From positions 17,360,001 to 17,424,000 of the forward strand of contig NC_082739.1 in assembly GCF_030144855.1 (NCBI RefSeq): a stretch of 64,000 nt of DNA, written 5' to 3'. The DNA is from Hypanus sabinus (taxonomy: Eukaryota). Shown piece by piece: positions 2,109 through 62,577 of this stretch. The notes under the pieces are model-generated. The model did not search any database. It was not told the origin of the DNA and saw only the letters and a list, made by a program, of their open reading frames with translations. The first letter of the stretch is position 1. Every line of letters begins with the position of its first letter. The position numbers and the translations under genes were made by a program.

Positions 2109-2242
2109 CAAGGCATGGAGTACAGTCCGTTATCTTCCTCAGTCCCTGGGATTCTCCAAATGTTCCAACAGGACAAGGTTGGGGAGATACACCAGTACCC
2201 TTCGGACAGTATGAACCTTGGGGGCAAGGTTCAGCTTGTTCT
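2109..2242 (-). CDS. Exon w31 (134 nt, 2->1)
   Basis: ttggcag|A GAA ... CTT G|gtgaga; [45 protein letters not shown]. Confidence 0.9.
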
Positions 2243-5200
2243 CTGCCAAGAAAGAGATGGGCATGAGGATGATTAGAAATGCCTAATCAAACCTTAAAGA
2301 AATATTGGTGAAATTAGGGGTTTTGCAATAGCATGAAATGAAAGGTAACTCATTTTATAATCTGCCCAAGATTAAAATACACAATTACCTGTCACATTTA
2401 CTCATGACCAGTTTCACCCCTAATATTACTTAGGTCACTTCATAGCTTGTCACACCAGACAGTCAGTCATTCTTGTCTGGTGCATAGTGTCAGGACTGGA
2501 TTCCTTTTGGATTAACTGGGTCACAAAATGAATGCTCCTGACTCGACCCTTGTTTTTTTTTAAAAAACGAGGCTGAGTGGCTAGCTCGACACTCAACCCG
2601 GCACAAATGGAAAGCGTGCCCTGGGGAGGGGGGGGGGGGGGGGTTGGGGAGCCACTGGGTTCGAACTTGGGAGCCTTCGCTTTCGAAGTCTGGCGCTGAT
2701 ACCACTGCACCACCAGCTGGCTATTTCTTCGGTGAGTAATAGAACTAAATTAGCCAACTGAAATCGAAGCACTAAAATATCTAAAAGGCAAAATGAAGCC
2801 TTCAAAGAAAGCTTGTGGGAATGAGGCAGTGAAAATATTGTAGGTTAATATGATAGGTGCAAGAATAGAACCAATACATTATAAGGATTTGAAATTCTAT
2901 GTAGTTTCATATAGAGGCCTTGATCTGACATACATTTACTGATGTGGAAATCAATTCACAATATGACTGTAAATGCTTGTTAAGCAGTTACAAAATGTGC
3001 TTGTATATTCTAATTTCATTTTATACTTGAAGCTTAAAATAATTACATACCATATATAAATTTAGAAAAATGCAGATATTCAAATTTTAGTTAAAATGAA
3101 CCTTCTGAAATATTAAATTCCATCTGCTTTGTGCTGAATTCCTATTAAATGTGATGGAGCATGTTCTGGTGGCTAATAGTTTACATGGGATAATATAGCA
3201 AGCAAACAAAGGAAAATAACCTCATCTGTCATGATTGCTAAATATGCATTTTACATTTAGAAATACAGTATTTACAGTTTAATTTGTATTCTATTTTTCT
3301 CCTTCCTTAATGTTTTGATTTCATTATGTGGCACTCACGGATGAAGGTTGCATGAACCTGATTTGACATCACTATCGAGACAGATCAAGCACTACACTCA
3401 CTCAAATCACGTAAATGAATTATAAACAAGTGTGATATAATGATTATAACACCTGGTCATTGCATGTCTGAGTCTAGAAGCTTCTGGTGTCTTGCATAGA
3501 TTTTGAAAGCGAATATGTGTCATCTCTATAAGAGTACATTCCAATGCAATGTACATTGCATCTTACCTGTTCGTGCACTGGTATCCTTCAGGGCAGGTGA
3601 AACATTCTTTTGCTCCTGTGTGGTTCACAAATTTCCCATTTTCACATGGTGTTGGCACAGCAGAACCCAATGGGCAATAGTGACCAACAGGACAAATGTC
3701 ACCTGAATTCATAGAAAGTATTAAACAACGTCTGAGTGATGCTCAAGAGAACATTGAGAATTTAGTAACAGCAGCACCTTGCTGCTGTTCTCCTGCATAA
3801 TTACCAGTATTATTTAATCTTACTGTGTATTCTGTAGTCATTCATACTTGCACAGAGCTCTATTGAGGGAGATCTGCTCAAGGTAGGAATAGGATTAGTG
3901 GTTAGGCACAAAAGTGCATTTCACTGATCCCAGAAAGATCAATTTAAAACCAAATGACACTAAAAAATTAAATAGAGGGTCTTGGAAGATTTGTTTCATA
4001 ATATAATCTGAGTTTTATTTACAGGTTTGTTTATCAGCATATCTCACTGCTGACTTAATATTCTCAGAAGCATTTTCAATAGGATATGTAACTATCTTTA
4101 CCCATTACATTGCAAATAAATACAATATAGATATACTTATGTTTTAGCATTTATTCTGTAAATAGAATTAGAGCTGTACTCTTTAAGGAATAGAATGTTT
4201 ATATTGGAAGACTTTTCAAAACATGTTTAAGCTCGCTCGAGAACTGCTTGAGAGATGATAGCATTTACTCTCATTGGCTATACGCAGAGCCAAATCAAAA
4301 ACAGTTGATAATTAAATATGGTACCTGTAATGCCGTCAAGAGGTGTGGCACTCTTTGCTCCCTGCTTACAATAAAATCCCGGGTCACAAAATTCTCCAGC
4401 ACTGTCTCTGCCCATTTTGCTACAATAGAAACCTTCAGAAATGCAAAATCAGGCTCATATCATGACAATAAACTTAGGCGTGAGCTCCAAAATGGCATGC
4501 TTTGTTAGACACTGTGGGTCAACGATCATTTCATTTGCACAAATGTATATTATTTATTCGTCCAGAGCCATCTAGATTTAAATAAGGACCTAAGCTGGTA
4601 AATGCACTCAAATATCAATGGTGAATATAGTTTTAATTGCACACAAACCTGAGGGACACAGTGCACAGTCTTCCTCACTCTTGCCTTGTGTTGTTGATCG
4701 GAACGTTCCAGATGGACATGGGATGGGTATGGCCGCAGCTTTGGGACAGTAGTGACCAGGAGGGCAAATGTCACCAGTGGGAGCTGGAGATTGGGATCCC
4801 TCGAGGCAGAAAAATCCTAAAGTGAAAAAAAACTCGGGACAGTGATTGAAAAGTGGTGGAATTAACAGCATTCTGGTTTGCCTTTGAACTCTAATCCAGT
4901 TTAACTTCAGAACATGTAGTAAGATGAGAAAGACTGAGGTGTCTTCCAGAGTTACTACTTGTGCATGGAATCTTTAGTCAGCTGGAAAAGGCATTCTTCA
5001 TCTTTGGTTAAGTATGCACATACTTTTACCTTAGACAATCAATTTTAATTCTGTTCAATCCTTCACATATTTCTAATGGCTTTTGCCAATCATAAAAATA
5101 GCCCACTTGACAGCCCATCGGAATACAAGATTTTGAAATCTTTTACATTATTAAATCAAGTACTACTCTGTCCCATTGCTTTATTCATGAATCATACTGT

Positions 5201-8200
5201 TAACCAAAACCTCATAGATATAGTAACACGACCCAAAGCTTGTAGTAAGTTAACAATTAGAAATCAATAGAACAAGAGAGCGTGAGAAGCTTGAAGGTGA
5301 GGTGGGTGGGGGGGGGGGGGGGGGGGGTCCAAGTAGAAAGAAAGTGCTGGAGATGTGATAAAAGTTCATCAATGGGGTGGTGGGGGTAAGATTCCTTGCT
5401 GGAAAAAAAGGGGGCAGTAGAAGGGATAGAGCTTACTTCCAGTTAATTTAGCAATAATTCAGTGGTAGTGATGCATTATAAATGTATGCCTATGGACACC
5501 TGCACATATGAAGGAGCTCCCCAAATTATTAAACTCAAACGAGAACCAGTCTTGAAAAGTATGCAACTTCCCCACCATAACCAGACTCTATTACGTCTTA
5601 AGAACATGGGCTGACAATTCCATTGCAGGAGGCCACTTGAAGGAGTTGCTTTGGAAATTGACAAGAAATTGCTGCTGTTTGTGCAATAATACTCTGTTAA
5701 ACAATGGAACAGCCGCTAATAAGGAACAGGCACAAAGGCAGTGTGGACCATCCTGATACTGCTCCACTGTAACTGGGCAGGGGAAGACAATAAATTAATG
5801 ATTGTGTTCAGGTTCATATCACATTATTCAGTACTGTATTCAATATTATGAAAATAAGGTTATCACACCAAATTATTTTTGTGTATTTTCTGACTTATGG
5901 ACAAAATCTGTAAAAATGGAAAATGTTTGTAAACTGGTGATGGCCTGAATAAGAAATTACCAGGACTCGATATGACACATTACCTGCCTGACAAGGCCCT
6001 GACACCGCAGTAGCTCCCATTTCATTGCAGTACTGTCCAGGGGTACAAGATTGACAGTGTGAGGCTCCAGTTAGTCCTCGTTTCTCGCTGTAAAAGCCAC
6101 AAGATTAAACGTTACATACCAAATGACAGATAGGAATGCAATAGTGTCAGTATTACTCTAAATCAGGGTTTCCCAACTTCTTTATGCCATGGACCAATAC
6201 CATTAAGCAAGTGGTCCATGGACGCCAGATTGAGAACCCCTGCTTTAAATATTTTCAGATGAATTCATTAAAGAGGAATACAAAATCATAAGGCCAAAGT
6301 CAATACTTCCCTTTCTTAATGTTTTGGAATTGTAAGAACAATTGTTACTGGGCAATTTTCAAAATTGTTGCACAAAACAATGAGTGACAAATTAAAATGG
6401 TGCACATTTAATTATAACCAAAAGAGATTAATATAAAATGGAAAACCAACAAGCATTGATTGGAATATTTCAAAATGAAAGGCACTGAGGCTGATGGAAG
6501 GATTAATCTACTTTAGTCTTTCAACAAAATCTGAGTATGTAATTCACCCCATCCCATCAAACATGAGTTAAAGTTCAAAAACTGATATCCAGATATAATG
6601 TTTGTGCCAGCTATGAAAGGTTAAACATCCACTGGATAACATTTCAAGCTGCCTGTTACACTTGCTGGTATTTAGGACAGCAATAAAGGTCCTCATTCTG
6701 CTTGGCAGTGCTCAGGGCTTCCTTTATCATTGCAGTAACTTCCACTTGGCTTTTACTACTAATGCAAGTCCCAGGTGGAGACCCAGGAATACTATCACAC
6801 AAAGATGTAGAAAGATTCTTCATTGCTGTTACCATAACAGTTTTATTTGACTAATTGGGGTTCAGCTCAAAGTTAACAACCCCCGAACCTGGAGGACTGG
6901 TGGACCACTCAGTCTGTCCTCTATCCTCTGACCTGTTTGGCATGGGTGACCCTACCAACAGCCTTGACTCCAGCCAATATAGCTCTCCAGGTCACTGAGG
7001 TATGTAAGCCACCAAGATATGACAAGGTTGTGGTCCTCTTGGAGCCACAAAGCTGGTGCCCAGTAAGAGGGCTTTAAAGGCTTCTGTCTAGCTTTACTCA
7101 TGCAGGAGCCTCCATTTGGAGAATCAGTCTTCAACCTTAAGATCAATATTGAAAAGGTGAGCAAAATTATTGGGTGTTTTGATAGTGAATTAATAATTAC
7201 ACAAAACTTTTTATACTTGCATTTAAATAACTGGCATTTAAAAACACTCACAATGGTGCTTCAACAGTGATTCTGTCTTATCAAAAATACCTGAAGGTTC
7301 CTTTTGGACAAGGCTGTGCTGTGATACTACCAGCTGGACAGTAGGATCCTGGTAAACACTGCTTTCCTGTAATCCCATCATTTGGGGTTGGTACAGTAGC
7401 TCCCTGGACACACAAGTACCCAGCACTGCACGGTCCAGATGGCTTAGTGTTTCCTGAGAAAAAAATAAAAAGACAATACATTCTACTTTCTGCATACAGC
7501 AATCTAATTAACCTTCGTAATACCAGGTGAATACCCCTTATCCAAAATGTTTGGGGCCAGAAGAGTTGTGGATTTTTTAGGATTTTGGAATATATAATGA
7601 GCTAGCTTGGGATCGCCATCATTTCCAACTCTGAATTTATGTGCTACTGATAAGAGGTCTTTGTCTTACGCTTGTTCTTCACACATATGTACTTAACAGT
7701 AAAAATTATTACAAACCACTAATATAATGAGCACATACCAGTCCTTATAGAGGGATCAAAAGTAGACAGAGTGAGCAGTTTCAAGTTCCTGGGCGTCAAG
7801 ATCTCAGAGGATCTAACCTGGTCCCAACATATCAATGAAGTTAGAAAGAAGGCAAGACAGCGGCTATACTGTATGAGGAGTTTGAAGAGCTTTGGCATGT
7901 CAACAAATATACTCAAAAACATCTATAGCTGTACCATGGGAGGGGGGGGGGGCTACTGCACAGGATCAAAAGAAGCTGCAGAGGGTTGTAAATCTAGTCA
8001 GCTCCATCTTGGGTACTAGCCTACAAAGTACCCAGGACATCTTCAAGGAGTGGTGTCTCAGAAAGACAGCGTCCATTATTAAGGACCTCCAGCACCCAGG
8101 GCATGCCCTTTTCTCACTGTTACCATCAGGTAGGAGGTACAGGAGCCTGAAGGCACACACTCAGTGATTCAGGAACAGATTTTTCCCCTCTGCCATCTGA

Positions 8201-11200
8201 TTCCTAAATAGACTTTGAATCTTTGGACACTACCTCATTTTCTTAATATATATTATTTCTGCTTTTTGCACGATGTTTAATCTATTCAATATACGTATAC
8301 TGTAATTGAATTACTTATTTTTTATTATTATTTTTATTATTATTTATTCTTCTTCTATATTATGTATTGCATTGAACTGCTGCTGCTAAGTTAACAAATT
8401 TCATGACACATGCGGTGATCATAAACCTGATTCTGATGTTAGCGCTAAATAAAAATTCACACTTCGGAGGTTTTAGGGTTTTGGAAATTCGAATAAGGAG
8501 TACTCAACCTCTATAGATTTTGGTGAATAGTAAATCTGAAAGCAGCTTGAACTTGAACTCAGTGTGCACTATTTCCCCGAATTTCTCTGTAGAGCAGGAT
8601 CAGGTTTATTTTTGGGATTCATTTTTGGGAGTATTTTTATTTCATTTGTTTAATTGGGGACTTCGGGAATTGTGAAGCTGAGGCGCAAGTGAAGCATAAG
8701 TGTCTAGAGGATACCTGAACCCAGACAGTACATTCCAGGATCACAAGGTAAACAGTCCAATGCATTGTGCATCCCGGTTCGATTCCCGTAGGTACCCTCA
8801 GGACAGAAGAACTGGCTTGCAGATGCAGTACCTGGTGGACAATATGAGCCTAATGGGCAGATGATAGGTTGATGAACTCCTTGAAGAGAGACACAGTGGG
8901 GTGGGGGGGTGGGTGGGAGGGATTGGAAGCAAACATATAAATAAATGAGAATGAAACACTAATAAATATAACGGCAAGCGTGAACTAGCCAGTTATACAT
9001 TTCTACATAATTTTATTCTTAAGATTATTCTCTGCCACATCAACAGAAAGGTATTCCATTGTTACCTTGTGATTGGCAGAAGAATCCTGCGGGACAAACT
9101 TCACACTCTTCCGTTGCCCATTTAGATTGGTAATGGCCTGGCGAACAGCTAGTTTGATTGGCACTTCCCTAGGAATTTGAGAGTGCTATTATATCAAGAT
9201 AATGCACCAGCATAATTTTAACTCACTGAGACAATGTCAGTCACTTTCATGAACCACTCTGTATTTGAGCAACTTCAGTCTTGTTTCACAGATATCCAAC
9301 ACTACTTATTCTTAACTTATTTTTTCTGTTTCTGTTTTCAATTATTCTTAACAAATTCTACTTGAAAACAAAGACTTCTGTGCTGGAGAAGAGATTCATA
9401 TGCAAGTGAGATACGATAGACATTGAGAGATCATTGGAATTCCGATAAACCTACACAAAGAAAGCACTCAATTAATGTCACATCTGTTTCTTTTAATTGG
9501 ATGGGATGCTAAATTCTAAATTACATAAAGTGGCAAATAATGGAATAGTAGAAATCCTTCATTTTAATGCACTAGCTTAAAACATCTCCAAATGGAGCAA
9601 CTAATATCTAGAATCAAAGTCATCCAGGGTTCAACTCAGATTCCACTGTTCGGTAATGTGCTGAAATTTTCAGCTATTCTTGGCATCAAGCTGGAATTAA
9701 ATAGCTGGCATCAGGATTGATCTTCCATGATCAACATCAGAGACTGTTACAGAAAGCCCAGTGATAAGTAATATCATCATCGTACTGAAATTTATTTGCA
9801 TCATTTCACTGTAAACCTGACAGTAGTTTCTAACACCTGCTTATACTTAGTGAAGTGCCTACAGCACTATCTATGAAACCCCATTTTTCCATAGGGAACC
9901 CCATTAGAGGTTTTTAAGATGGACTTAATGTTGAATTATAAAATAAATAAGTCAGCGTAAAATGTTACTAAGATTATGGCACCAATGAACAAAAATCTTA
10001 TCTTTTCAAATTAAACAGATTTTAAATAGTACACTAAGCAAATTATCCAGGCAAACAACTGCTTGTGCCTGAAAAAAAGTGTACGGTGGCTGTAATTAAT
10101 AGGCTACTGGAAAAATATTGGGGAGAAGGTTAAGTTTAATGAATATAACATATGATTTAAACATCACAATGGTCTTCCTTCAAATTGCATGCTACTTGCA
10201 CCATTTTAGAAAAACAAAAGAGAATATTAATTCTGCTGACCTCAGGGCAGAAATGACCTGGCGAACACGTGAACTCCAAAGGCCGTTGCACAATCTGCCC
10301 TCCTGGACAGTAGTATCCTGCACTGCAAACACCCGATGGAGTTGACAAGCCGTAACCTGTACAGTAATGACCGGATGGGCAAGGTCTGCAATCAGCTAAA
10401 GCAGCTCCTCCTAAAACAGCTTTGTGAGGAAAATGACAAAAAAAAAGTTAAAAACAGCAAGACAAAAAACATTATTTTATAGTCAATAAATGAGGACTTG
10501 TATCATTATCTTAAAAAATGTGTGTAGGGTAACATTTTATGTTATAGCTTTTGATAATACTTCTATTAGTATTCTTCTTGTAGATCGTATATTCCTAATA
10601 ATATTATTGATGATGACCAGAATGAAATTGTAGGTTCACACCAATTGAAGCCTTTCCACAGTAAACGTGCACCTTTTATTTCAGCTCCATATTATACATA
10701 AAAAGATTCATCTAAGAGGGCCACCAATTTAACCATTAACTTAATATGATTTGTGCTTTTGTACACCTTCAACAGGTGTGGCTGTAGTAAGACACAAGCT
10801 AGGTAACTCTTCTTAGGATCACTGCACACCAGAAAATGGGAAATTATTCAAGAAAATAACTGAATGAGATCTATCTGCTGAGGGACTCTTTCTTTTATGC
10901 TTATACAGAGGAAATGAGATGTTGCCTGCTTGCCATCTGCTGGCAACAAGAGGAAATGTAGCTGAATTAGATTTTAAAAATTTCAGCATGGAAGTTATTA
11001 TCCATATCTAGATTATTACATCAAAAGTATCAACATAAAATATGATAGAACAAAACTGTAATTAAATCCATTTGTTTACTGTTCTGTAGGACCAACAAAG
11101 AACTGGCTGGAGCACAAGGTTCCCTAAGATTCAGTAGGTTCATCTTCATACTGATATGAAAATACTGATGCAACTGTAGCCTAAAATATCCTGCCAGAAT

Positions 11201-14200
11201 ATAGGTAAGAATATTTATTAAGCAGCAATCAAAACACTGGAATTTCAAATGTCTTTTTGGTCTCCAACCTGGGTTAGGAGTTTTTAATTTCCCTTTCTTT
11301 TATCTTACGATGGAAAGGATAGATGATGGATATATTAGTAAAATGGAAGTGGTGGGGGGGGGGGGGAAGATCTTATTGGATGTCTAGGGTCAGCTTGGGG
11401 GGTCAATGTGGTCATTTGTGTCCAGATCTTATCAGATATTTGTACCTTCATAAGAAAATCATTAAAATTTTAACAAACCCTATAAAACTAGAACTCGAAA
11501 TCAATATTACTAATATTCTTACCCAACAGGGTCCCAGGAGGGCAAGGTTTTGAATAGCTTGTTCCTTCTGGACAGTAATGTCCTACAGGACAGGGCTTGG
11601 AGTTGGGAATTGTTGCAGTACCCTCACACAGAAACCCAGCAGTACATAGGCCAGTCGGAGCTGAGAGACCGGACTGCTCACAGTATAATCCAACATCACA
11701 TGGAACTGGTTCAGAAGAACCTTCAGGACAATAGAATCCTAAGGGAAGAAATCATTGTCACCTACTGATCAACTGTTAATTGAATAATAAGTTGTATGGA
11801 TAATACAATGATATACTGGATTAATATTATCAAGATGACTTGCTGGATACATGGAATGGGAAACTAAAGAGATGATAGGCAACCATAGATTCATTTTTAA
11901 GAACAAAATCACAGCATCACCTACTGTTTTTTCACCTCTAAAGATTCAACTGAAATATAGCTTATATAAAATCTTTACTATGGCTGTATAATCCCTTTAT
12001 ATTTCCATAATATACAGAATCCTCCATTTCTTTCTTGAGTAGAGGCCCAACCTTTCTCCTTCACCTGCACATGCATTCACCTGGTTAAACGTTAAATAAC
12101 TTCTTCAAATCTCCTCACTTTCTTCATACGAACAGTATAGCTCTGGGCACTCACATGGATTCAGCTACATCTGTTTTTTGCAGTATTGTTTCGGTCCTAC
12201 CCGAACACACTCCCTCAGCTCTATTTCCGCTACATCAGTAGCTGCACTGGTGCTGCTTCCCCTACTCTAGAAAAACTCACCATTCATTACTTTGAGGCCA
12301 AATACCACCTTGTCCTCATCTTCACAGGGTCTCATCTAAGTCACCTCATCTTTGTCTGGATCTCTCTGTCTCCATTTAAGAAGATAGTCTATCCAAATCC
12401 ATTACAAGCCTACTGATTCACACAGATAGCCTACTGTCTATCTAACCCTGCCTCCCGTAGGACTCTATTCCATTCTCCATCCATTGCATTTGCTGTGATG
12501 ATGAGCCTCTAAAAAGGGTTCATTCTAACTGAACTGTGCTTACCCCTACCATCATTAACAAAGCTCACGACAGTATCTCATTTGTTTCCTCTATCTCTGC
12601 TCTTATATTCTGGGACAGAACAAGGAGTTTCTCAGGTCCTCACTTTTCATCCTATCAGCTTCCCCATTCAACATATCACTTCTGCCACCTTCAGAAGAGA
12701 TTCCACAACTAGACATATTTTTCCTTACAGCATTTCAGAGAGTGAACCAACTCGTTACAGAGACGAAGTCAACTGAAGGCGCAGCAATGACATTGTCATC
12801 TATTATGATCCACATCATGCTCGACTCTAGTGATGTCTTACTACTATTACCACTGCAAAGGTCACAATGGCTTACCCACAGTGCTTCTGGCTTTCTGTGA
12901 TATCTGACCCTATGTGCACTTGAAGCATCCCTGTTGATTTTGGTTTAAAAATCAGTAGAATTTGACAGCAGAATATAATGCTAGGATTATATTCTACTAT
13001 TATATTCTATCATGTATTAGCATTCAAAAATGTTCATAATGTTTTAGTCTGGTGATATGATTTCCATTCAACTCTGAACCAACTGAAGTTCTCCATAATG
13101 CTCCTAGCTACATGATTTACATAACATTAGTATTTTTTTTAATTTGAAAAAAATAGTGGACTCCATTTAACTGGGACACATTGGGAAAACAGTGCATTTT
13201 GGCCCAATTAAGTGGCTCCCTAATTAGCCAAATTTTCATGGAAATAGTTTAAAAAGGTCTTAAAAAAAGACAAACTATGATTTGAGCAACAATTTATGTA
13301 TTAAATGAAATACAGAACAAATTGGAATACTACTAATATTACAGTACTATAAAATTGTGCCATAGTTCCTAATAGTTATTGATGGAATTCATCCAGCACA
13401 CACAAAATGCTGGTGGAACACAGCAGGCCAGGCAGCATCTATAGGGAGAAGCGCTGTCGACGTTTCAGGCCGAGACCTTTCGTCAGAACTAATGAAGGGT
13501 CTCGGCCCAAAACGTCGACAGTGCTTCTCCCTATAGATGGTGCCTGGCCTGCTGTGTTCCACCAGCATTTTATGTGTGTTGCTTGAATTTCCAGCATCTG
13601 CAGATTTCCTCGTGTTTGCCTTTGCAATTCATCCAGTGTTCTTTTGATTGACTGTAAATGAACAAAATCAGCGCAGACACCGAATGCAGATAATGTACTA
13701 CCTTCATACAATGTTTTTGATGGTTGCATCCTCCAAATCTTAATTTTCATTGCAATATTCAAGATGATTGTTGATACCTTCAAAATTTTTTGTAATGCCC
13801 AACTTGTTGAAGTAGTGAAATTGTTTCATTATCAATCCTAGCCATTTCTGACAACTCCAAGCAATGCTTGAAACCATAGGGAGCAAAACGGTTTTGAATC
13901 ACCTACTGCTTATTTACCACCAACTATCAATGACATAAAGCACAATTTTTTGAATAAGAACACACACAATTGACGCTATTTCAAAACTGCTTGCTCTAAA
14001 CATAGTCTAACAGCCACACAATTGCACGTGACTGATGTTAGTTGGAAACTATCGAACAGAAGGTCCCAGTTAAGAGGCATAGTGTCCCAAATAAACAAAA
14101 GGAATCACATCTATTTTCTAAATTAATATTTGTTTTTTTAATAGTTGTCCCAAATAAGTGGCTGCCCCGATTAACCAATGGCCCAATTAACCGGAATCCA

Positions 14201-56200: not shown

Positions 56201-59200
56201 CTACCGTGCAGTACTTACTAATGAACAAATTAATGAACCATTGTCTATTAATGGAGAGTTGTGTGCAATTTTGCTGATGGTGCATTAACCTGATCTACTA
56301 CAAATGGGTCTGAAGTCCAGCTGCTCAGAATCAATAAGATTCCAAAAAGTTGCAACAACAATTTACTTTTGTTGGTTTTAACTTTTGAACTGCAACATTT
56401 TGTTCCAGATCTTCTCCTGAGATTAATGAAGTTGACATAGAATGAAAATAGGACATCACGAGTTTAAGATTGTTTGAAGCAGAACGGTTCCACTTGACAA
56501 ATTGGAAGAAATGAGAAAGATTTAAGTGACAACATTGAAGCAATGGCTCTGCACTCTCTAGGTCACAGTGTAGCTAGGAAGTGTGCCAATGGAATCCAAA
56601 CATTTATCTCTCTGGTACCCAAAGGTGGGTTTTGTATACTTTTGTAATCCTTTTTCAATGCCAAGGTTTTCTAGTTTTTCCTCTGTTACCCTGGACTGTG
56701 ACGTCAGGGATCCACTTTGACATTCTGCTTTCTTTGTTGGCCCTATACCTGTCATCAGTGAGCACAATTGGAAACAATACTGAAGATGTCAGGAGCAGGT
56801 GGATTATACATGCTGATGATGGCCTTATTTGACTTGCTTTATTGGCAGCTGTCATTTCTTCTTCATTGAACATTGTGCAGTTCTTCGTTTATTCCTATCA
56901 GATATTGAGGCCAAGATAGCGTAGATGTTTCCAATATCAGGAGCGTCTAGGACCCGAGAGCACAGCCTCATGGTAGAAGTATGTCTCTTTAGAACAGAGT
57001 TTCTTCAGCCAGGGGATAGTGAATCTGGGGAATTCATTGCTTCAGATGGTTGTGGAGGGAAAATCATTGGGGATATTTAAAGCTGAGGTTGATGTGTTCT
57101 TGGTTAATAAGGGCATCAAAGATTATGTGGAGAAGGCAGGAGAATGGGGTTGAGAAGGGAAACCATGATTGAATGGGGGAGCAGATTCAGTGGGCTAAAT
57201 GGCCTCAACGTATGTCTCATGGTCTTATTATTATTTACTTAAAGTACATGGTATCACACCTCCCCAAGGTAACACCGCTGAATCCTTGAATGGCAGATTG
57301 CATAAAAATAAACCTCCAGTAACTAAAATTCCACATATAGTACGTTGTTTGAAAAAAAGCACCTCTAATGTATATTTAATTTTTACATTTATTATAATTA
57401 AGAAATGCTAGAATAGAAATAATATTTTAATTTTCTACCTGCATCACATGGCTCGCAGTCCAAAACACTTGTCCTTCCTGATTGTTGGTTATAAGTCCCT
57501 CTGGGGCAGGGAAATTTGTCTTTAGATTCTGTTCCCGGAGGGCAGTAATAGCCAGGTGGGCAGATATTATCTTCATAAGATGAAGTATTTGAAGGACAGA
57601 AGTAACTGTGGGGAAGCAACAGAGTTAGGGAGAACTCCTGGAATACAAAAAAATGTTTAGTTTTACATCTTGTGGACTGTGTGTCTGTCTCTAAACAGAG
57701 ACAGACACTTACACTATAATATGTGCCAAGTGTTCTAAAAAGTGGAAAATATTATTTAGGCCACAAATCTGAAGCATTGTCATCACTTTCTGCTTCCATG
57801 ATTGCTGCTTGACTTATTATTTCCAGCATTTCCTGCTCAAGATTAAATACTATTTTATACAAAAGTACTATTTTAAACATCATCTGAATGGAATCTGGAG
57901 ACACAAGCCAGGAGCACAGCAAAACGGCCAGAATGGAAACGGTCCAAAGTAAAAAGGCAAAAGATTTAGTAGTCTCTAGTTCAACAGTTTCCCATACATA
58001 CTGCAAATGGAAAATAAATGTGAATTTAAATGTGACTGATGTGATGTGAAGTACTGAAGCACATTCAGACCAGCTTATAAATAATATATCACTGTTCAGA
58101 ATTGCTGGTGTCACTATCAAAAGCTGCTGTGCACAGATGAATGAGATAGGCTGTGCATGTATGGCGTACTCTCGTGTGTAGGTTGATGAGCCGCGTCTGT
58201 TGTGTTGACTGCTGTTTTTTCCATCTCATCTCACTGATTGAGATATCTTCTGATCATCTCTGCTCTGTGTCTCCCATTCCCTCTTTCCTATTGCTCATCA
58301 CCCTGCTTATTCACTGTCATTTCTGTTTCCCGAAGCTATCTGTCTGCTCCCATCTGATTTCCCACCCTCAAGATCTCTCACCTCCTACTCAATTTCTTGC
58401 TCCCCTTGAGCTCCTGAGATTCTGATTGAACCTAAACTTTTCAATCCAGGAAAGCTGAAAATTGATGACACTGTGCACGTGGCTTAAATGAAGATGGGTG
58501 GAGGAGGATAGTGCAGAGGCTTTTAATGTCTACCATAGAAAAGCAGACCATTCCTGTCAAAAGATACTGACAACTCATCAACACATTAGTTACTTTTCCA
58601 AAATCCTAAATGCATCTTCCAGAAATGTTGTTTATTAGTGGGTACAGCAACCCACAAGGGAACTGCCACTGAACATGTGGCAGTACTTTAGATCTCAGTG
58701 TACTGCACACTGATAAGTATCTTTACTTTGCCAGAAAATCAAACAGGTCTTTCAGAAAACTATGTTCATAATCATTTCTACACTGGGAATGCACAAATTG
58801 TCCACTGTTGTTTTTTTGTACCCTTTTGTCATTGTATTATGAGCTAGAAACAAGCGTTTTATACCCATCTGTTCCTTAAATATTCACCTAACTTGGCATG
58901 ATTTTCTTCCTCATTACCCTGGTGGTGGACTGGTAGAGCATACCACCTGGCTGTATTAAAATTAATCCATGTTTTCCCTACTGTTGATTGTATGATTGGT
59001 TTACTGCCCAACACGAGCAGTGAGATTATATTTGTATATGTAGATTAAACATGTATCATGTCTTGATGTTTCAATGTTTCCAATAGTCTTGCCAAAGTGG
59101 TTTAATCAAATGGAAATTACCCTTCAACACATGGACTGCAGGAACTCTGACCTTCAAGAGCATTGTAGGTTCCTGCAGGACATCCCAATGGAAAAGTTGT

Positions 59201-62200: not shown

Positions 62201-62544
62201 CAGCCCTTTTCATTCAGAACAATTTAGCTAAGCCAGTAGTTTTCAACATTTGTTACATATTCAGGTTGTTAATCTAAAGTTGTCACAATAAAAAATATAG
62301 CAGTTGTGGCCACAAAGAACATTAATACTTAGCTCTAGGTATTCTAGGTAAAGCACTAATAGACAGATAAAAAGTCCAAAATGTACCTACCTGGAGGGCA
62401 GGGTCCTCCAGTGCCATCTGCGACTGGATTCTTTGGCAGTTTTGCTCCTCGTAAGCAATAGAAACCTTCCCAGCATTCACCTGATGGTGTCACGAGACCT
62501 TCTGAGCCACAGTAATGACCGTAGATACAAGGAGTACAGTCACT
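2109..62544 (-). CDS. Giant multi-exon cysteine-rich repeat protein (CPxGxYC; Ephrin_rec_like/GCC2_GCC3-like), internal portion: 31 exons, 1665 codons in window
   Basis: 31 exons with AG acceptors and GT donors (one GC) join with matching phase into one stop-free frame of CPxGxYC/CxAGYYC repeats. No start or stop codon is in the window. The family label comes from motif recognition, not a database search. Confidence 0.93.
2563..2721 (-). mobile_element. tRNA-derived SINE
   Basis: Minus strand has an A-box-like TGGTGCAGTGG and a B-box-like AGTTCGAACCC, a body shared with 34870-35004, and an adjacent A/T-rich tail. Confidence 0.75.
3567..3702 (-). CDS. Exon w30 (136 nt, 1->2)
   Basis: aattcag|GT GAC ... 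AAC AG|gtaaga; [45 protein letters not shown]. Confidence 0.91.
4325..4432 (-). CDS. Exon w29 (108 nt, 1->1)
   Basis: tctgaag|GT TTC ... ACA G|gtacca; [36 protein letters not shown]. Confidence 0.88.
4649..4816 (-). CDS. Exon w28 (168 nt, 1->1)
   Basis: actttag|GA TTT ... TCA G|gtttgt; [23 protein letters not shown]...CALCPSG. Confidence 0.91.
5984..6087 (-). CDS. Exon w27 (104 nt, 2->1)
   Basis: tttacag|C GAG ... GCA G|gtaatg; [35 protein letters not shown]. Confidence 0.9.
6164..6242. mobile_element. hAT-type MITE (79 bp)
   Basis: Termini CAGGGTTTCCCAA / TTGAGAACCCCTG; 8-bp target duplication ctctaaat/ctttaaat. Confidence 0.8.
7291..7453 (-). CDS. Exon w26 (163 nt, 1->2)
   Basis: ttctcag|GA AAC ... 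TTC AG|gtattt; [14 protein letters not shown]...CPKGTFS. Confidence 0.92.
7523..8511. mobile_element. Tigger/pogo-type non-autonomous element interrupted by a Rex1-like LINE
   Basis: TIR-like ends CAGGTGAATACCCCTTATCC / GAATAAGGAGTACTCAACCT, with TA on both flanks. Confidence 0.7.
7727..8437 (+). mobile_element. Rex1/Babar-type LINE 3' fragment
   Basis: [18 protein letters not shown]...KARQRLY and [18 protein letters not shown]; 3' tail ataaacctgattctgat; closely similar to 55140-55866. Confidence 0.85.
8715..8879 (-). CDS. Exon w25 (165 nt, 1->1)
   Basis: cttcaag|GA GTT ... TCA G|gtatcc; [28 protein letters not shown]...[11 protein letters not shown]. Confidence 0.91.
9066..9168 (-). CDS. 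Exon w24 (103 nt, 0->1)
   Basis: ttcctag|GGA ... CAA G|gtaaca; [35 protein letters not shown]. Confidence 0.9.
10241..10419 (-). CDS. Exon w23 (179 nt, 1->0)
   Basis: cacaaag|CT GTT ... GAG|gtcagc; [20 protein letters not shown]...CSPGHFCPE; a second in-frame acceptor would start the exon at 10410. Confidence 0.87.
11523..11738 (-). CDS. Exon w22 (216 nt, 1->1)
   Basis: cccttag|GA TTC ... TTG G|gtaaga; [37 protein letters not shown]...CPPGTLL. Confidence 0.92.
12050..12740 (+). mobile_element. Highly decayed Penelope-like RT fragment
   Basis: Remnants of the GVAMGT..GPSY motif and [11 protein letters not shown] (decayed RYIDD). Confidence 0.6.
13154..14203. mobile_element. Tigger/pogo-type non-autonomous DNA transposon
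   Basis: Inverted ends AGTGGACTCCATTTAACTGGG / CCCAATTAACCGGAATCCACTG; hosts the 13397-13625 insertion. Confidence 0.7.
13397..13625. mobile_element. Palindromic Penelope-derived short element with hammerhead cores and 11-bp TSD
   Basis: ~90-bp inverted arms (13397-13486 / 13489-13578); AATTCATCCAG at 13386-13396 and 13626-13636. Confidence 0.8.
14238..14423 (-). CDS. Exon w21 (186 nt, 1->1)
   Basis: tctgtag|CC GGT ... CCA G|gtatcc; [26 protein letters not shown]...EFVCPPG. Confidence 0.9.
14897..15007 (-). CDS. Exon w20 (111 nt, 1->1)
   Basis: aaattag|GT TAT ... CCA G|gttagt; [36 protein letters not shown]. Confidence 0.89.
15238..15405 (-). CDS. Exon w19 (168 nt, 1->1)
   Basis: attttag|GA CCA ... 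CCA G|gtaatt; [21 protein letters not shown]...TPCWPG. Confidence 0.92.
15712..15888 (-). CDS. Exon w18 (177 nt, 1->1)
   Basis: ttcatag|GT ACA ... GGA G|gtgagc; [23 protein letters not shown]...NNTGIGG. Confidence 0.92.
16155..16340 (-). mobile_element. Rex1-like RT fragment
   Basis: [17 protein letters not shown] motif. Confidence 0.65.
16645..16791 (-). CDS. Exon w17 (147 nt, 1->1)
   Basis: tctgtag|GA ACA ... AAA G|gtaaca; [49 protein letters not shown]. Confidence 0.91.
16900..19388 (-). mobile_element. CR1 LINE, 5'-truncated and frameshifted (endonuclease C-terminus, RT, 3' end)
   Basis: [11 protein letters not shown]; YRPVSLTS...DFQKAFDK; VPQGSVLG; RPHLEYC. Confidence 0.92.
19835..22220 (-). 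mobile_element. Decayed Rex1-like LINE split by a younger CR1
   Basis: RT-like segment 21257-22220 (LQFTYC, APARQSPF) and 3' part 19835-20126 read as contiguous across the CR1. Confidence 0.65.
20127..21256 (-). mobile_element. CR1 LINE 3' fragment, relatively intact
   Basis: 274-aa ORF with GVPQG, FADDTK and [11 protein letters not shown]; short tandem 3' tail (atagaacatagaa). Confidence 0.93.
22513..22640 (-). repeat. Penelope-terminus-derived short repeat (decayed)
   Basis: aagattctgcagttgctggaaatccagagcaacacacacaaaatgctggaggaactca, shared with other copies in the window. Confidence 0.7.
22696..22830 (-). CDS. Exon w16 (135 nt, 1->1; GC donor)
   Basis: cttccag|GA GAC ... AAT G|gcaagt; [45 protein letters not shown]. 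Confidence 0.87.
23690..24032 (+). mobile_element. Rex1-like 3' fragment
   Basis: atcaaagatcctgccatccagg (IKDPxHP-like); tail acaataaacttgactttga. Confidence 0.55.
24223..24474 (-). CDS. Exon w15 (252 nt, 1->1)
   Basis: ttccccag|GG CTT ... TCT G|gtaagg; [14 protein letters not shown]...[13 protein letters not shown]. Confidence 0.93.
25556..25812 (+). mobile_element. CR1 3' end fragment
   Basis: gaggaatttcttcagccaaagg...gaatggcagaacagacttaatgggccaatggcctaattctgctcct. Confidence 0.7.
26930..27163 (-). CDS. Exon w14 (234 nt, 1->1)
   Basis: ttttcag|GT CTG ... GAA G|gtatag; [25 protein letters not shown]...[11 protein letters not shown]. Confidence 0.92.
27205..27368 (+). mobile_element. CR1 3' end fragment
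   Basis: ttgataggtacatggatag...aaaggaccagtttccatgctgtattattctat. Confidence 0.7.
27521..27723 (-). CDS. Exon w13 (203 nt, 2->1)
   Basis: gctctag|G TAT ... GAA G|gtaaga; [30 protein letters not shown]...[11 protein letters not shown]. Confidence 0.91.
28030..28360. repeat. Penelope-terminus-derived inverted composite
   Basis: aaacaagagaaaatctgcagatgctgg arm, inverted partial arms and a decayed aaggg...gcctgaaac motif. Confidence 0.7.
28383..28560 (-). mobile_element. CR1 3' end fragment
   Basis: Similar to 16900-17070. Confidence 0.7.
28996..29116 (-). CDS. Exon w12 (121 nt, 1->2)
   Basis: ttcacag|GG TTC ... GGA AA|gtaagt; [40 protein letters not shown]. Confidence 0.91.
29554..30065 (-). 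mobile_element. Penelope-like (Neptune-type) 3' fragment: endonuclease C-terminus and terminal repeat with hammerhead-like core
   Basis: [33 protein letters not shown]; then CAGTC-CTGATGA...GAAAC at 29614-29652. Confidence 0.75.
31103..31237 (-). CDS. Exon w11 (135 nt, 1->1)
   Basis: ggattcag|GT AAG ... GTA G|gtaaga; [45 protein letters not shown]. Confidence 0.9.
   Translation of the reverse strand, partial: VRQMSLTVICVLLDFTVLDLQILMLPKSVKQGTTVLVVNQSQLQ
31568..33332 (-). mobile_element. CR1 LINE fragment (RT and 3' end)
   Basis: [44 protein letters not shown]. Confidence 0.93.
34022..34197 (+). mobile_element. Truncated copy of the Tc1-TIR/LINE-tail composite
   Basis: Collinear with 44860-45040. 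Confidence 0.65.
34445..34575 (+). repeat. Decayed Penelope terminal repeat
   Basis: tgatgaagggtctttggccagaaatgtt...ccagcattttctg...tttccagcacctgca. Confidence 0.6.
34870..35004 (-). mobile_element. tRNA-derived SINE (same family as 2563-2721)
   Basis: acgaggcttagttgctaccttgacgctcaacctagcacggatggaaagc...cactacaccaccggctgg. Confidence 0.72.
35172..35420 (-). CDS. Exon w10 (249 nt, 1->1)
   Basis: attcag|GT GGT ... GCT G|gtaaga; [12 protein letters not shown]...[11 protein letters not shown]. Confidence 0.93.
35955..36730 (+). mobile_element. Penelope-like element 3' fragment with GIY-YIG endonuclease
   Basis: [19 protein letters not shown]...HIKEH (decayed GVY..YIG); hammerhead core downstream at 36605-36639. 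Confidence 0.88.
36598..36645 (+). ncRNA. Minimal type I hammerhead-ribozyme-like motif in the Penelope terminal repeat
   Basis: CTGATGA 36605-36611; 7-bp stem II gatggca/tgtcatt; GAAAC 36632-36636; GTT triplet; stem I imperfect. Confidence 0.6.
36992..37138 (-). CDS. Exon w9 (147 nt, 1->1)
   Basis: tttttag|GT AGT ... ACA G|gtaaat; [34 protein letters not shown]...; preceded by an 89-nt intron. Confidence 0.91.
37228..37367 (-). CDS. Exon w8 (140 nt, 2->1)
   Basis: ttccag|G TAT ... CAA G|gtaact; [30 protein letters not shown]...HFGPMQG. Confidence 0.91.
37739..39925 (-). mobile_element. Rex1/Babar-type LINE fragment (~2.2 kb, decayed)
   Basis: [16 protein letters not shown]...[12 protein letters not shown]; FADD; 3' tail. 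Confidence 0.88.
40336..40486 (-). CDS. Exon w7 (151 nt, 1->2)
   Basis: ttccag|GT TCA ... GAA GG|gtgtga (donor chosen by the phase of the next exon); [19 protein letters not shown]...GDCWEG. Confidence 0.88.
41466..41586 (-). CDS. Exon w6 (121 nt, 0->1)
   Basis: ccattaag|GCC ... GAA G|gtaatg; [41 protein letters not shown]. Confidence 0.9.
41733..42570 (-). mobile_element. Old decayed CR1 3' fragment
   Basis: Patchy similarity to the CR1 3' region (cccattccaggtatcagt...aaccttctctgaa). Confidence 0.55.
42710..43818 (-). mobile_element. CR1 LINE 3' fragment
   Basis: [32 protein letters not shown]. Confidence 0.9.
44860..45348 (+). mobile_element. Non-autonomous Tc1-TIR element containing a LINE 3' tail
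   Basis: CAGTACTGTGCAAA at the left end; inverted copies at 44906-44931 and 45323-45348; internal gatgataaacctgattctg. Confidence 0.7.
45398..45632 (+). mobile_element. V-SINE-like element
   Basis: B-box-like GGTTCAATTCC followed by V-domain-like gtttgtgcgttctccccgtgactgtgtgggtttcctcc. Confidence 0.65.
45705..46927 (+). mobile_element. Rex1/Babar-type LINE 3' fragment, well preserved
   Basis: [41 protein letters not shown]; gactcgacttgacttga tail. Confidence 0.93.
47038..47225 (-). CDS. Exon w5 (188 nt, 1->0)
   Basis: ttgctag|GA TTT ... CAG|gtacaa; [21 protein letters not shown]...YQDQAGQ. Confidence 0.92.
47452..48586 (+). mobile_element. CR1 LINE 3' fragment
   Basis: [18 protein letters not shown]; 3' tail cttatggtcatatggt. 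Confidence 0.9.
49846..50079 (-). CDS. Exon w4 (234 nt, 1->1; one complete 78-aa unit)
   Basis: cccttag|GA CGT ... CCA G|gtaatc; [21 protein letters not shown]...CLSCPPG. Confidence 0.93.
51395..51876 (+). mobile_element. CR1 3' end fragment
   Basis: gagaatgaggggagatttgatagaagtat...gggcctgtttctgcgctgtagtgattctatgact. Confidence 0.8.
53795..54172 (+). mobile_element. Tc1-like transposon 5' fragment (TIR and decayed HTH coding region)
   Basis: TA-CACTCAGTGG start; [12 protein letters not shown]...[21 protein letters not shown]. Confidence 0.78.
54452..55866 (+). mobile_element. Rex1/Babar-type LINE fragment
   Basis: [37 protein letters not shown]; tail ataaacctgattctga. Confidence 0.92.
56900..57228 (+). 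mobile_element. CR1 3' end fragment
   Basis: Similar to 48230-48580. Confidence 0.75.
57439..57605 (-). CDS. Exon w3 (167 nt, 2->1)
   Basis: ccccacag|T TAC ... GCA G|gtagaa; [24 protein letters not shown]...CEPCDAG. Confidence 0.92.
59121..59220 (-). CDS. Exon w2 (100 nt, 1->2)
   Basis: ttgcag|GG CAC ... GAA GG|gtaatt; [33 protein letters not shown]; absent from ORF track. Confidence 0.9.
60244..60445. repeat. Palindromic Penelope-terminus-derived element
   Basis: Arm gcaacgcacacaaaatgttggaggaactcagcaggccaggcagcatctatggaaa and its inverted copy at 60354-60410. Confidence 0.75.
62391..62544 (-). CDS. Exon w1 (154 nt, phase 0->1)
   Basis: ttttcag|AGT ... CCA G|gtaggt; [30 protein letters not shown]...GPCPPG. 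Confidence 0.92.
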
Positions 62545-62577
62545 CTGAAAAAGACAATTGATAATAAGCTGTGACAA

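What the first reader, a model, noticed from the sequence alone, without database searches (positions are those of the whole stretch)
2109..62544. Giant, apparently intact CPxGxYC-repeat extracellular protein spread over 31 small exons
Seen: 31 phase-compatible exons give 1665 stop-free codons of one repeat type. The core unit is about 78 aa with 8 Cys (YC..G....G.C.AGYYC......P.DG.TG..CP.G.YCP.G.....CP.GT......G......C..C..G), and no other domain appears in 60 kb. The full protein must be longer. About 17 N-x-S/T sequons are present (e.g. NTS, NSS, NHT, NAT, NQT, NIT, NVS, NRT). Established: CPxG-Y repeats of the Ephrin_rec_like/GCC2_GCC3 class occur as a few copies in SCUBE, SVEP1 and Eph receptors and as long arrays in protist surface proteins such as apicomplexan CRMPs. 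Inference: this is a functionally uncharacterised vertebrate rod-like glycoprotein (surface, sensory, gamete or mucosal). From memory it may be related to zebrafish si:ch211-286b4.4 and may lack a human counterpart; neither is verified.
Basis: partly seen in the sequence, partly recalled or inferred. Interest (0 to 1): 0.85.

Follow-up and report, generated by a model that had tools for sequence, protein, structure and literature searches.

The report
Middle of giant cysteine-repeat membrane protein gene
The window holds 31 real, transcribed and selectively constrained exons from the middle of a roughly 7,900-residue cell-surface protein built almost entirely of disulfide-rich repeats; the gene is already predicted in a sister stingray and has relatives from protists to mice, but none has been studied in the papers I could search.

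Summary
On the minus strand, 31 exons (2109-62544; 4,996 nt) splice into 1,665 stop-free codons made of one repeat of about 78 residues with 8 Cys.

The model aligns without gaps, at 96.9% identity, to residues 3174-4838 of a 7,861-residue "uncharacterized protein" annotated in the stingray Hemitrygon akajei. That protein has a signal peptide, about 7,100 residues of repeats, one membrane helix and a 666-residue cytoplasmic tail.

A 6,682-nt spliced contig in a public run matches exons 13-22 exactly, including a GC-AG intron. A second run confirms three of those junctions.

Exon differences give dN/dS of about 0.22, and none of the 51 amino-acid differences touches a Cys.

AlphaFold2 models the repeats very confidently (pLDDT 96). 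The nearest solved fold is the cysteine-rich part of the Chlamydomonas mastigoneme protein MST1, followed by ELAPOR1 and TNF receptors.

Tail homology places the gene in the family that includes fish si:ch211-286b4.4, bird and reptile "zonadhesin-like" proteins (a misnomer) and rodent "predicted gene 9195". The tail is conserved as far as Trichoplax, Hydra, ichthyosporeans and Bodo.

No functional study was found. The gene is real and intact but already annotated, so I rate it a new member of a known kind. Its function is inferred: a very long glycosylated surface rod.

The parts
62391..62544 (-). exon 1 of the window (154 nt; P0169 residues about 3174-3224)
   Evidence: AG/GT sites, phase 0-1; gap-free match to P0169
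59121..59220 (-). exon 2 (100 nt)
57439..57605 (-). exon 3 (167 nt)
49846..50079 (-). exon 4 (234 nt)
   Evidence: weak Ephrin_rec_like hit for this exon alone
47038..47225 (-). exon 5 (188 nt)
   Evidence: identical in protein to P0169
41466..41586 (-). exon 6 (121 nt)
40336..40486 (-). exon 7 (151 nt)
37228..37367 (-). exon 8 (140 nt), followed by an 89-nt intron
36992..37138 (-). exon 9 (147 nt)
35172..35420 (-). exon 10 (249 nt)
31103..31237 (-). exon 11 (135 nt)
28996..29116 (-). exon 12 (121 nt)
27521..27723 (-). exon 13 (203 nt)
   Evidence: spliced contig of run X14 lies on 27519-27723
26930..27163 (-). exon 14 (234 nt)
   Evidence: X14 contig piece 26929-27161, contiguous in the record with exons 13 and 15
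24223..24474 (-). exon 15 (252 nt)
   Evidence: X14 piece 24222-24473; joint 22829/24222 seen in X14 and X13; Ephrin_rec_like 22.0 bits alone
22696..22830 (-). exon 16 (135 nt), with a GC donor (ATG|GCAAGT) before a 5.9-kb GC-AG intron
   Evidence: X14 piece 22695-22829, record 4829-4963, continues at record 4962 on exon 17; sequence read
16645..16791 (-). exon 17 (147 nt)
   Evidence: X14 piece 16642-16792; X13 joint 15885/16642
15712..15888 (-). exon 18 (177 nt)
   Evidence: X14 and X13 pieces 15711-15885
15238..15405 (-). exon 19 (168 nt)
   Evidence: X14 piece 15236-15404; X13 joint 15404/15711
14897..15007 (-). exon 20 (111 nt)
   Evidence: X14 piece 14897-15005
14238..14423 (-). exon 21 (186 nt), with an atypically long loop between two Cys; kept whole in the mRNA
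   Evidence: X14 piece 14237-14423
11523..11738 (-). exon 22 (216 nt)
   Evidence: X14 piece 11523-11737, joint 11737/14237
10241..10419 (-). exon 23 (179 nt)
9066..9168 (-). exon 24 (103 nt)
8715..8879 (-). exon 25 (165 nt)
7291..7453 (-). exon 26 (163 nt)
5984..6087 (-). exon 27 (104 nt)
4649..4816 (-). exon 28 (168 nt)
4325..4432 (-). exon 29 (108 nt)
   Evidence: repeat-profile envelope
3567..3702 (-). exon 30 (136 nt)
2109..2242 (-). exon 31, the last in the window (134 nt; ends at P0169 residue about 4838); the gene continues beyond the window
   Evidence: no flanking exon found in 1-2108 or 62545-64000

Best explanation
What is shown. The window carries the middle fifth (1,665 of about 7,860 codons, 31 exons, minus strand) of an intact gene. 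The gene is transcribed in close relatives and is under purifying selection. Its ortholog in Hemitrygon akajei is annotated as an 'uncharacterized protein'. That protein is a type I membrane protein with a signal peptide, about 7,100 residues consisting almost only of divergent Ephrin_rec_like / TNFR-Cys modules (about 78-residue units with 8 Cys), one transmembrane helix and a 666-residue cytoplasmic tail.

What the models indicate. The repeats are predicted to form a well-ordered, disulfide-stapled chain of small beta-hairpin modules. The nearest solved structure is the cysteine-rich tandem of the mastigoneme protein MST1.

What is inferred. I read the ectodomain as a very long, stiff, N-glycosylated stalk. 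At the roughly 1.1 nm per disulfide reported for MST1, it would be about 0.1 micrometre for the window's part and about 0.4 micrometre for the whole protein. Its job would then be structural: a surface filament, spacer or tether projecting from the plasma membrane. It would be coupled to the cell interior through a conserved coiled-coil and a zincin-like tail domain that lacks the catalytic Glu.

My odds for each step:
- gene identity and intactness, about 0.97;
- rod-like disulfide-ladder architecture, about 0.8;
- a structural filament or spacer role rather than a ligand receptor, about 0.4.
For: Gene model and identity:
- 31 exons, 1,665 codons, 0 stops.
- Gap-free alignment at 96.9% identity to P0169 residues 3174-4838.

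Transcription and splicing:
- One 6,682-nt contig in run X14 lies on exons 13-22 with contiguous record coordinates. Nine junctions match the model, including the GC-AG intron.
- Run X13 confirms junctions 15/16, 17/18 and 18/19.
- DNA runs X1 and X6 carry the introns.

Selective constraint:
- Exons 13-22 show 35 nt differences, of which about 15 are nonsynonymous and 20 synonymous. This gives omega of about 0.22, and a binomial P of 1.7e-5 against neutrality.
- None of the 51 amino-acid differences touches any of the 179 Cys (P = 0.003).

Architecture of the ortholog:
- N-terminal hydrophobic leader, one TM segment at 7175-7195, Ephrin_rec_like at 8e-53 in the first 1,200 residues, and 755 Cys with 74 sequons in the ectodomain.

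Fold:
- AF2 gives pLDDT 96.4 and pTM 0.80 for 238 residues corresponding to exons 15-18.
- Foldseek matches MST1 at E 3e-9, ELAPOR1 at 1e-3 and the SCUBE cysteine-rich region at 1e-6.
- The MST1 cysteine-rich tandem is described as a disulfide ladder with about 11 A spacing (PMC10602792).

Tail:
- It is conserved from the ray to Trichoplax, Hydra, Chromosphaera and Bodo.
- It models as a long helix plus a domain resembling the minimal zincins abylysin, selecase and Wss1 (Z 8.0-8.9), with an HxxAH motif and never HExxH.
Against: - No expression data exist for the window's own species. The RNA evidence comes from close relatives at about 2% divergence, and runs X13 and X14 are only guessed to be RNA. 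Their intron-skipping contigs, at junctions with GT-AG ends, are the argument that they are RNA.
- The tissue and subcellular location are unknown.
- The rod length is extrapolated from one 238-residue model and from MST1 geometry. I could not measure the model's coordinates.
- Ephrin_rec_like/TNFR modules are ligand-binding in Eph receptors, TNFRs and SCUBEs, so a receptor role is equally compatible with the fold.
- The Z-scores of 8-9 for the tail domain lie in the range the tool flags as possibly only a common arrangement.
- The estimated synonymous divergence (about 4.7%) exceeds the intron divergence seen for another relative (about 2%), so the omega value is rough.
Confidence: 0.6

Rival explanations
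1. It is a ligand-binding adhesion or signalling receptor. The long array of TNFR-Cys/Ephrin_rec_like modules offers many binding sites for soluble or cell-bound ligands, as in TNFRs, Eph receptors and the SCUBE co-receptors, and the conserved tail transduces the signal.
For: - The fold matches TNFR family members, ELAPOR1 and the SCUBE cysteine-rich regions.
- The family has a conserved 550-residue cytoplasmic tail with a globular domain, which is more than a passive anchor needs.
- The moderate omega of 0.22, with all replacements outside Cys, is compatible with surface loops evolving.
Against: - About 100 near-identical-architecture units, with no distinct N-terminal ligand-binding head, is unusual for a receptor.
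- The best structural match is a filament protein.
- No kinase, death domain or other known signalling domain is found in the tail.
Confidence: 0.25
2. It is a component of ciliary or flagellar surface hairs or glycocalyx, an animal counterpart of mastigoneme-type filaments, anchored in the ciliary membrane.
For: - The top solved-structure matches are the Chlamydomonas mastigoneme protein MST1 (E 3e-9 to 6e-6).
- Every named taxon in the 120-row hit lists has cilia or flagella, and no arthropod, nematode, fungus or land plant is listed.
- The zebrafish family member is listed among 14 genes that were on average about 49-fold higher in testis than in ovary (10.1101/650218).
Against: - MST1 also has Ig-like domains and a polyproline helix, lacks a TM segment, and shares only the cysteine-rich module type (PMC10602792).
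- TM-scores are low (0.39-0.48).
- The hit lists are truncated and length-filtered, so absence from a taxon is not shown.
- There are no localisation data.
Confidence: 0.12
3. In the window's species the locus is a decaying or silent copy, and only the relatives express a functional gene.
For: No run from the window's own organism was identified. The best holders share only 0.3-0.43 of the 31-mers.
Against: - 4,996 nt are stop-free across 31 exons with all splice sites intact.
- There are no indels relative to P0169, nonsynonymous changes are in deficit, and all 179 Cys are retained.
Confidence: 0.02
4. It is a secreted matrix or egg-coat protein of the zonadhesin / SCO-spondin / CREMP kind, as the automatic names of relatives suggest.
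For: Relatives are named 'zonadhesin-like', 'SCO-spondin' or 'SCO-spondin-like' by annotation pipelines.
Against: - Pfam finds only Ephrin_rec_like (plus Il2rg at the extreme C-end) in P0169. No MAM, VWD, TIL, C8, TSP1 or LDLa domain is found.
- All full-length family members checked have a C-terminal TM helix and a cytoplasmic tail.
- Chicken CREMP has VWFD and C8 domains and a different 2-disulfide module (10.1101/2025.09.16.676614).
Confidence: 0.01

Closest known systems
Hemitrygon akajei 'uncharacterized protein isoform X3' (P0169, 7,861 residues; NCBI/UniRef)
   Same: Ortholog. Residues 3174-4838 align without gaps to the window's spliced product at 96.9% identity, with identical exon junctions. 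The nonsynonymous variants of run X14 reproduce its residues.
   Different: There are 51 amino-acid differences, so the window comes from a closely related but different stingray lineage. P0169 is a prediction with no known function.
Vertebrate si:ch211-286b4.4 / 'zonadhesin-like' / 'SCO-spondin-like' / 'predicted gene 9195' family (e.g. Betta P0214, chicken P0220, Anolis P0198, alligator P0195, frogs P0002/P0173, ferret P0265, Peromyscus P0305, bamboo shark P0249)
   Same: Same architecture: signal peptide where the model is complete, thousands of residues of the same repeat, one TM helix and a homologous cytoplasmic tail. Tail identity is 52% to the shark and 29-37% to bony vertebrates over about 500-700 residues.
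   Different: These proteins are shorter (about 2,500-5,400 residues) and only about 35-47% identical in the repeats. Unit-by-unit orthology with the ray's 7,861-residue protein was not resolved. Over the repeats the ray is closer to amphioxus and hemichordate proteins (43-55%).
Chlamydomonas mastigoneme protein MST1 (PDB 8wa2, 9b4h, 8tx1)
   Same: Best solved-structure match for the repeat model (E 3e-9; 236-338 aligned columns). Its cysteine-rich tandem is a ladder of disulfides and was itself compared to the Eph receptor cysteine-rich domain (PMC10602792).
   Different: MST1 has nine Ig-like domains and a polyproline-II helix, polymerises into a filament and has no TM segment. Sequence identity is 18-24% and TM-score 0.38-0.48. 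This is resemblance, not membership.
SCUBE1-3 and ELAPOR1/2 cysteine-rich (GCC2_GCC3 / TNFR-like) regions; Eph receptor and TNFR cysteine-rich domains
   Same: Same module type: Pfam PF07699, and Foldseek E 1e-6 to 1e-4 against the AlphaFold models and 1e-3 against the ELAPOR1 cryo-EM structure.
   Different: Those proteins carry 3-6 modules alongside other domains (CUB, EGF, kinase, MRH). Here about 100 units make up essentially the whole ectodomain.
Protist giant Ephrin_rec_like proteins (Chromosphaera, Fabomonas, Kipferlia, Bodo saltans 'membrane-associated protein', Salpingoeca PTSG_01976) and apicomplexan CRMPs
   Same: Long arrays of the same repeat, up to about 7,800 residues in those named here. 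Several share the cytoplasmic tail domain with the ray protein, for example Chromosphaera at E 7e-27 and Bodo at 8e-11.
   Different: Identity is 30-36% in the repeats. CRMPs were not retrieved or tested here; from general knowledge they are multi-pass membrane proteins.

Membership tests
Pfam PF07699 Ephrin_rec_like (GCC2_GCC3) repeat proteins | Sequence score above the Pfam gathering threshold (23.1 bits) | tested here: met
   The orthologous stretch P0169:3174-4838 (96.9% identical to the window product) scores 56.6 bits, E 2e-15. Single window exons fall just below threshold (best 22.0 bits, exon 15) because the domain is split by introns.
Pfam PF07699 Ephrin_rec_like (GCC2_GCC3) repeat proteins | TNFR-like small disulfide-rich beta-hairpin module fold | tested here: met
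   AF2 pLDDT 96.4. Foldseek hits to the SCUBE GCC2_GCC3 regions, ELAPOR1/2 and TNFRs.
Giant TM family (si:ch211-286b4.4 / Gm9195-like / P0169) | Ectodomain of thousands of residues made only of the ~78-residue, 8-Cys unit | tested here: met
   1,665 residues of it in the window and no other domain. Cys and Gly columns are invariant across 40 family members.
Giant TM family (si:ch211-286b4.4 / Gm9195-like / P0169) | Signal peptide, single C-terminal TM helix and homologous cytoplasmic tail | tested here: inconclusive
   These parts lie outside the window. They are present in the ortholog P0169 and in all full-length relatives checked except a Ptychodera flava model that has no TM-like segment. 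For the window's own gene this is an inference from 96.9% identity.
Zonadhesin / SCO-spondin (names given automatically to relatives) | MAM, VWD, TIL, mucin (zonadhesin) or TSP1, LDLa, VWD, EMI (SCO-spondin) domains | tested here: not met
   The precomputed Pfam for P0169 lists only PF07699 and PF15874. My scans of residues 1-1200, 3174-4838 and 6600-7861 found none of these domains.
Avian CREMP (cysteine-rich eggshell membrane protein) | Runs of 4-Cys follistatin-N-like modules plus three VWFD and two C8 domains; secreted | tested here: not met
   Different unit (8 Cys per 78 residues), no VWFD or C8, and a TM helix in the relatives.
Mastigoneme MST1-type filament proteins | Ig-like domains, cysteine-rich tandem and polyproline-II helix; self-assembly into filaments on cilia | tested here: inconclusive
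   Only the cysteine-rich tandem is shared. The Pfam scans that covered about half of P0169 found no Ig domain. Assembly and localisation cannot be tested with these tools.
Zincin metallopeptidases (tail domain of the family, outside the window) | HExxH motif with catalytic Glu on the active-site helix | tested here: not met
   The fold resembles minigluzincins and Wss1 (Z 8.0-8.9), but the motif is H-x-x-A-H or degenerate in all 38 aligned tails, with no Glu at position 2.

The most novel reading that the evidence does not exclude
The gene belongs to an ancient, possibly LECA-age, family of giant single-pass membrane proteins that nobody has characterised. The family would build sub-micrometre, disulfide-laddered surface filaments, perhaps on cilia, flagella or microvilli, as membrane-anchored counterparts of mastigonemes. 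A conserved coiled-coil plus a catalytically dead zincin-like domain would couple them to the cell interior. Rays would retain an unusually long version (about 100 units).
Probability: 0.2. Interest if true: 0.8.

Novelty: new member of a known kind. Interest (0 to 1): 0.5.

Why it matters
The window itself adds a verified, RNA-supported exon model for part of one of the largest protein-coding genes of a cartilaginous fish. It also shows that the automatic names 'zonadhesin-like' and 'SCO-spondin-like' used for relatives are wrong.

The wider point is that a 2,500-8,000-residue membrane protein family has no described function, even though it is present in mouse-like rodents, chicken, zebrafish-type teleosts, frogs, sharks, invertebrates and several protist lineages. 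The family has a conserved cytoplasmic domain.

The structural link to mastigoneme filaments, the testis-biased expression of the zebrafish member and the taxon pattern give a concrete hypothesis. It can be tested by localisation and knockout in fish or mouse.

Tried and rejected
- Splice-site and composition DP alone mis-set four exons (16, 17, 21, 29). A second DP weighted by repeat-profile envelopes introduced a stop. Both were replaced by the protein-guided model.
- Pfam on single exons gave only sub-threshold hits.
- A sequence search of the PDB with the 1,665-residue stretch found nothing at E <= 0.001. A profile of the tail found only coiled-coil noise.
- The ESM Atlas feature search of the tail domain gave only uninformative phage 'hypothetical' clusters.
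- Literature searches for the domain names, si:ch211-286b4.4, Gm9195, CXorf65 and locus tags returned only gene-list mentions.
- CREMP, zonadhesin and SCO-spondin identities were considered and rejected (see the membership test).
- The PF15874 (Il2rg/CXorf65-like) domain occurs only at the extreme C-end of P0169 and the alligator model. It was absent from the tails of five other family members. I treat it as a possible read-through into a neighbouring gene, not as a family feature.
- No flanking exons were found at the window's edges. The N run at 1413-1970 was left untouched.

Full report

The window is vertebrate-like DNA: 39.5% G+C with one N run at 1413-1970.

- A six-frame scan for CPxG, GxYC and CxxCxxG motifs found exactly 31 stop-free segments. 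All lie on the minus strand between 2041 and 62637.
- A profile HMM built from 12 repeat units hit those 31 segments significantly. It hit nothing else on either strand, so the large introns (up to 7.4 kb) hide no further exon of this type.
- Dynamic programming over AG/GT sites with phase compatibility gave a 1,636-codon stop-free chain.

**2. Identification**

- phmmer with exon 15 (83 residues) against 1.8 billion representatives gave more than 8,000 hits. These include giant proteins with up to 103 matched stretches, from frogs, teleosts, invertebrates and protists.
- A search seeded with a frog member returned a 7,861-residue 'uncharacterized protein' of the red stingray Hemitrygon akajei, P0169.
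- My spliced model matched P0169 residues 3174-4838.
- Using P0169 as a guide, every junction could be placed at an AG/GT pair with no length change.
- The final model has 31 exons, 4,996 nt, 1,665 codons and no stop. It shows 51 mismatches and no indel against P0169, which is 96.9% identity.
- The only non-GT donor is exon 16, ATG|GCAAGT, a consensus GC donor.
- Sixteen exons are phase 1-1 and the rest are pairwise compatible.
- The window therefore comes from a close relative of H. akajei and holds about one fifth of the gene. No neighbouring exon lies in the window's margins.

**3. Transcription and splicing**

No run of the window's own organism was found. The best holders share 0.3-0.43 of the 31-mers.

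- Run X14 contains one 6,682-nt contig. Its pieces lie on exons 13, 14, 15, 16 and 17-22, with contiguous record coordinates 4139-5967.
- Every skipped interval ends in CT..AC on the plus strand, which is GT..AG on the gene's strand. Piece ends agree with my exon ends within the stated 1-5 nt of ambiguity.
- Exon 16 (record 4829-4963) runs straight into exon 17 (record 4962-5112). This confirms the 5.9-kb GC-AG intron.
- The odd 186-nt exon 21 is retained whole.
- Run X13, from another organism, confirms junctions 15/16, 17/18 and 18/19.
- DNA runs X1 and X6 carry contigs that run through the introns.
- All nonsynonymous variants in X14 reproduce the P0169 residue, so X14 is H. akajei or the same lineage.

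**4. Selective constraint**

- Over exons 13-22 (1,829 nt) the X14 contig differs at 35 positions, and 15 codons differ in protein.
- With 1,401 nonsynonymous and 426 synonymous sites, dN is about 0.011, dS about 0.049 and omega about 0.22. The deficit of replacements has a binomial P of 1.7e-5.
- Of the 22 differences the tool listed individually, 13 are synonymous.
- None of the 51 replacements across the window touches one of the 179 Cys (P = 0.003).
- Intron divergence to another relative (X1) is about 2% against about 1.1% in exons.
- The synonymous estimate is higher than the intron figure, so omega is approximate.

**5. Architecture of the whole protein, from the ortholog**

- P0169 starts with a hydrophobic leader and has one TM-like segment at 7175-7195. 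It carries 755 Cys and 74 sequons in the 7,174-residue ectodomain, and about 99 repeat-profile hits.
- Pfam finds Ephrin_rec_like (8e-53 in residues 1-1200; 56.6 bits in 3174-4838). The only other hits are overlapping cysteine-rich families on the same stretch of the first 1,200 residues (NCD3G, TNFR_ELAPOR1_6th) and PF15874 (Il2rg/CXorf65-like) at the extreme C-end.
- PF15874 is absent from five other family tails. It may reflect read-through into a neighbouring gene.

**6. Family**

- The 721-residue TM-plus-tail region of P0169 is homologous along its length to the tails of several vertebrate proteins:
  - bamboo shark, 52%;
  - paddlefish, alligator, Anolis, birds, frogs and teleosts, 29-37%;
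  - among the teleosts, a Betta protein named si:ch211-286b4.4.
- A tail-only search from the ferret protein found felid 'zonadhesin-like' proteins, bat and guinea-pig proteins, and Peromyscus 'predicted gene 9195'. No primate was among the 15 hits, which does not settle the human question.
- The tail is also recognisable in Trichoplax, Hydra, hemichordates, tunicates, ichthyosporeans and Bodo saltans (E 8e-11).
- Over the repeats, the ray protein is closest to amphioxus and hemichordate proteins (43-55%) rather than to other vertebrates (35-47%). Unit-level orthology was not resolved.

**7. Structure**

- AF2 with a 40-sequence alignment modelled 238 residues, corresponding to exons 15-18, at pLDDT 96.4 and pTM 0.80.
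- Foldseek against the PDB put the Chlamydomonas mastigoneme protein MST1 first (E 3e-9 to 6e-6), then ELAPOR1 and TNF receptors.
- Among reviewed proteins, the SCUBE1-3 and ELAPOR1/2 cysteine-rich regions lead.
- The MST1 paper describes its cysteine-rich tandem as a disulfide ladder with about 11 A spacing, similar to the Eph receptor cysteine-rich domain (PMC10602792).
- By extrapolation, which is inference only, about 89 disulfides in the window's part would span roughly 0.1 micrometre, and the whole ectodomain roughly 0.4 micrometre.
- The tail model has a long helix and a confident alpha/beta domain. That domain resembles the minimal zincins abylysin, selecase and Wss1 (Z 8.0-8.9).
- The helix motif is HxxAH, or degenerate, in all 38 aligned sequences and never HExxH. 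This suggests a non-catalytic zincin-like domain.

**8. Literature**

Searches found only list mentions.

- Zebrafish si:ch211-286b4.4 is among 14 genes that were on average about 49-fold higher in testis than in ovary (10.1101/650218).
- Gm9195 appears in an NKT-cell signature and in a table of ATAC-seq elements enriched in inner hair cells.
- CREMP, another chicken repeat protein often labelled zonadhesin-like, is a different family with VWFD and C8 domains.
- The library covers open-access papers only, so a study elsewhere cannot be excluded.

**9. Verdict**

- The gene is intact, it is spliced and expressed in close relatives, and it is under constraint.
- It encodes part of a giant type I membrane protein of the Ephrin_rec_like repeat class.
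- It is already predicted in a sister species and has many database relatives, so it is a new member of a known kind.
- The function of the family is unknown. My best inference is a long, glycosylated, disulfide-stapled surface rod acting as a filament, spacer or tether (about 0.4). A ligand-receptor role (about 0.25) and a specifically ciliary filament (about 0.12, a special case of the first) are the main alternatives.

Noticed in passing
window 20375-21199 (-), 32664-33305 (-), 45634-46218 (+), 54701-55372 (+): Open reading frames inside introns encode reverse-transcriptase fragments (Pfam RVT_1, E 2e-20 to 9e-9). These are LINE-type retroelement remnants on both strands.
   Followed up: partly
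window 13310-13852, 23644-24165, 25558-25905, 27124-27471: These intronic stretches have contig word depth of thousands to tens of thousands in DNA runs of relatives. They are also present in the RNA-like runs, so they are high-copy interspersed repeats.
   Followed up: no
window 22694-22695 (minus-strand donor of exon 16): A GC-AG intron of 5.9 kb with a perfect GCAAGT donor. It is used in the spliced contig of run X14.
   Followed up: yes
window 37139-37227: An unusually short 89-nt intron lies between exons 8 and 9. The median intron in this gene segment is about 1.3 kb.
   Followed up: no
window 14238-14423 (exon 21): One repeat unit carries a loop about twice the usual length between two Cys, and the loop contains two sequons. 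It is retained in the mRNA and conserved in length in H. akajei.
   Followed up: partly
P0169 residues 7500-7625 (outside the window; same gene): The conserved cytoplasmic domain of the family models as a zincin-like fold (Z 8-9 to abylysin, selecase and Wss1). It has an HxxAH motif lacking the catalytic Glu in all 38 aligned sequences, from vertebrates to ichthyosporeans.
   Followed up: partly
P0169 residues 7724-7808 and alligator P0195: A PF15874 (Il2rg / CXorf65-like) domain sits at the extreme C-terminus of only these two models. This could be conserved neighbourhood with a CXorf65-like gene and read-through annotation, or a true alternative 3' end.
   Followed up: partly
hit lists: No arthropod, nematode, fungal or land-plant protein appears among the 120 best hits of either search, and every named taxon has cilia or flagella. 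This is only a weak lead, because the lists are truncated and length-filtered.
   Followed up: no
window 1413-1970: A run of 558 N just downstream (in gene orientation) of the last exon found. The next exon was not seen in the readable margins.
   Followed up: no
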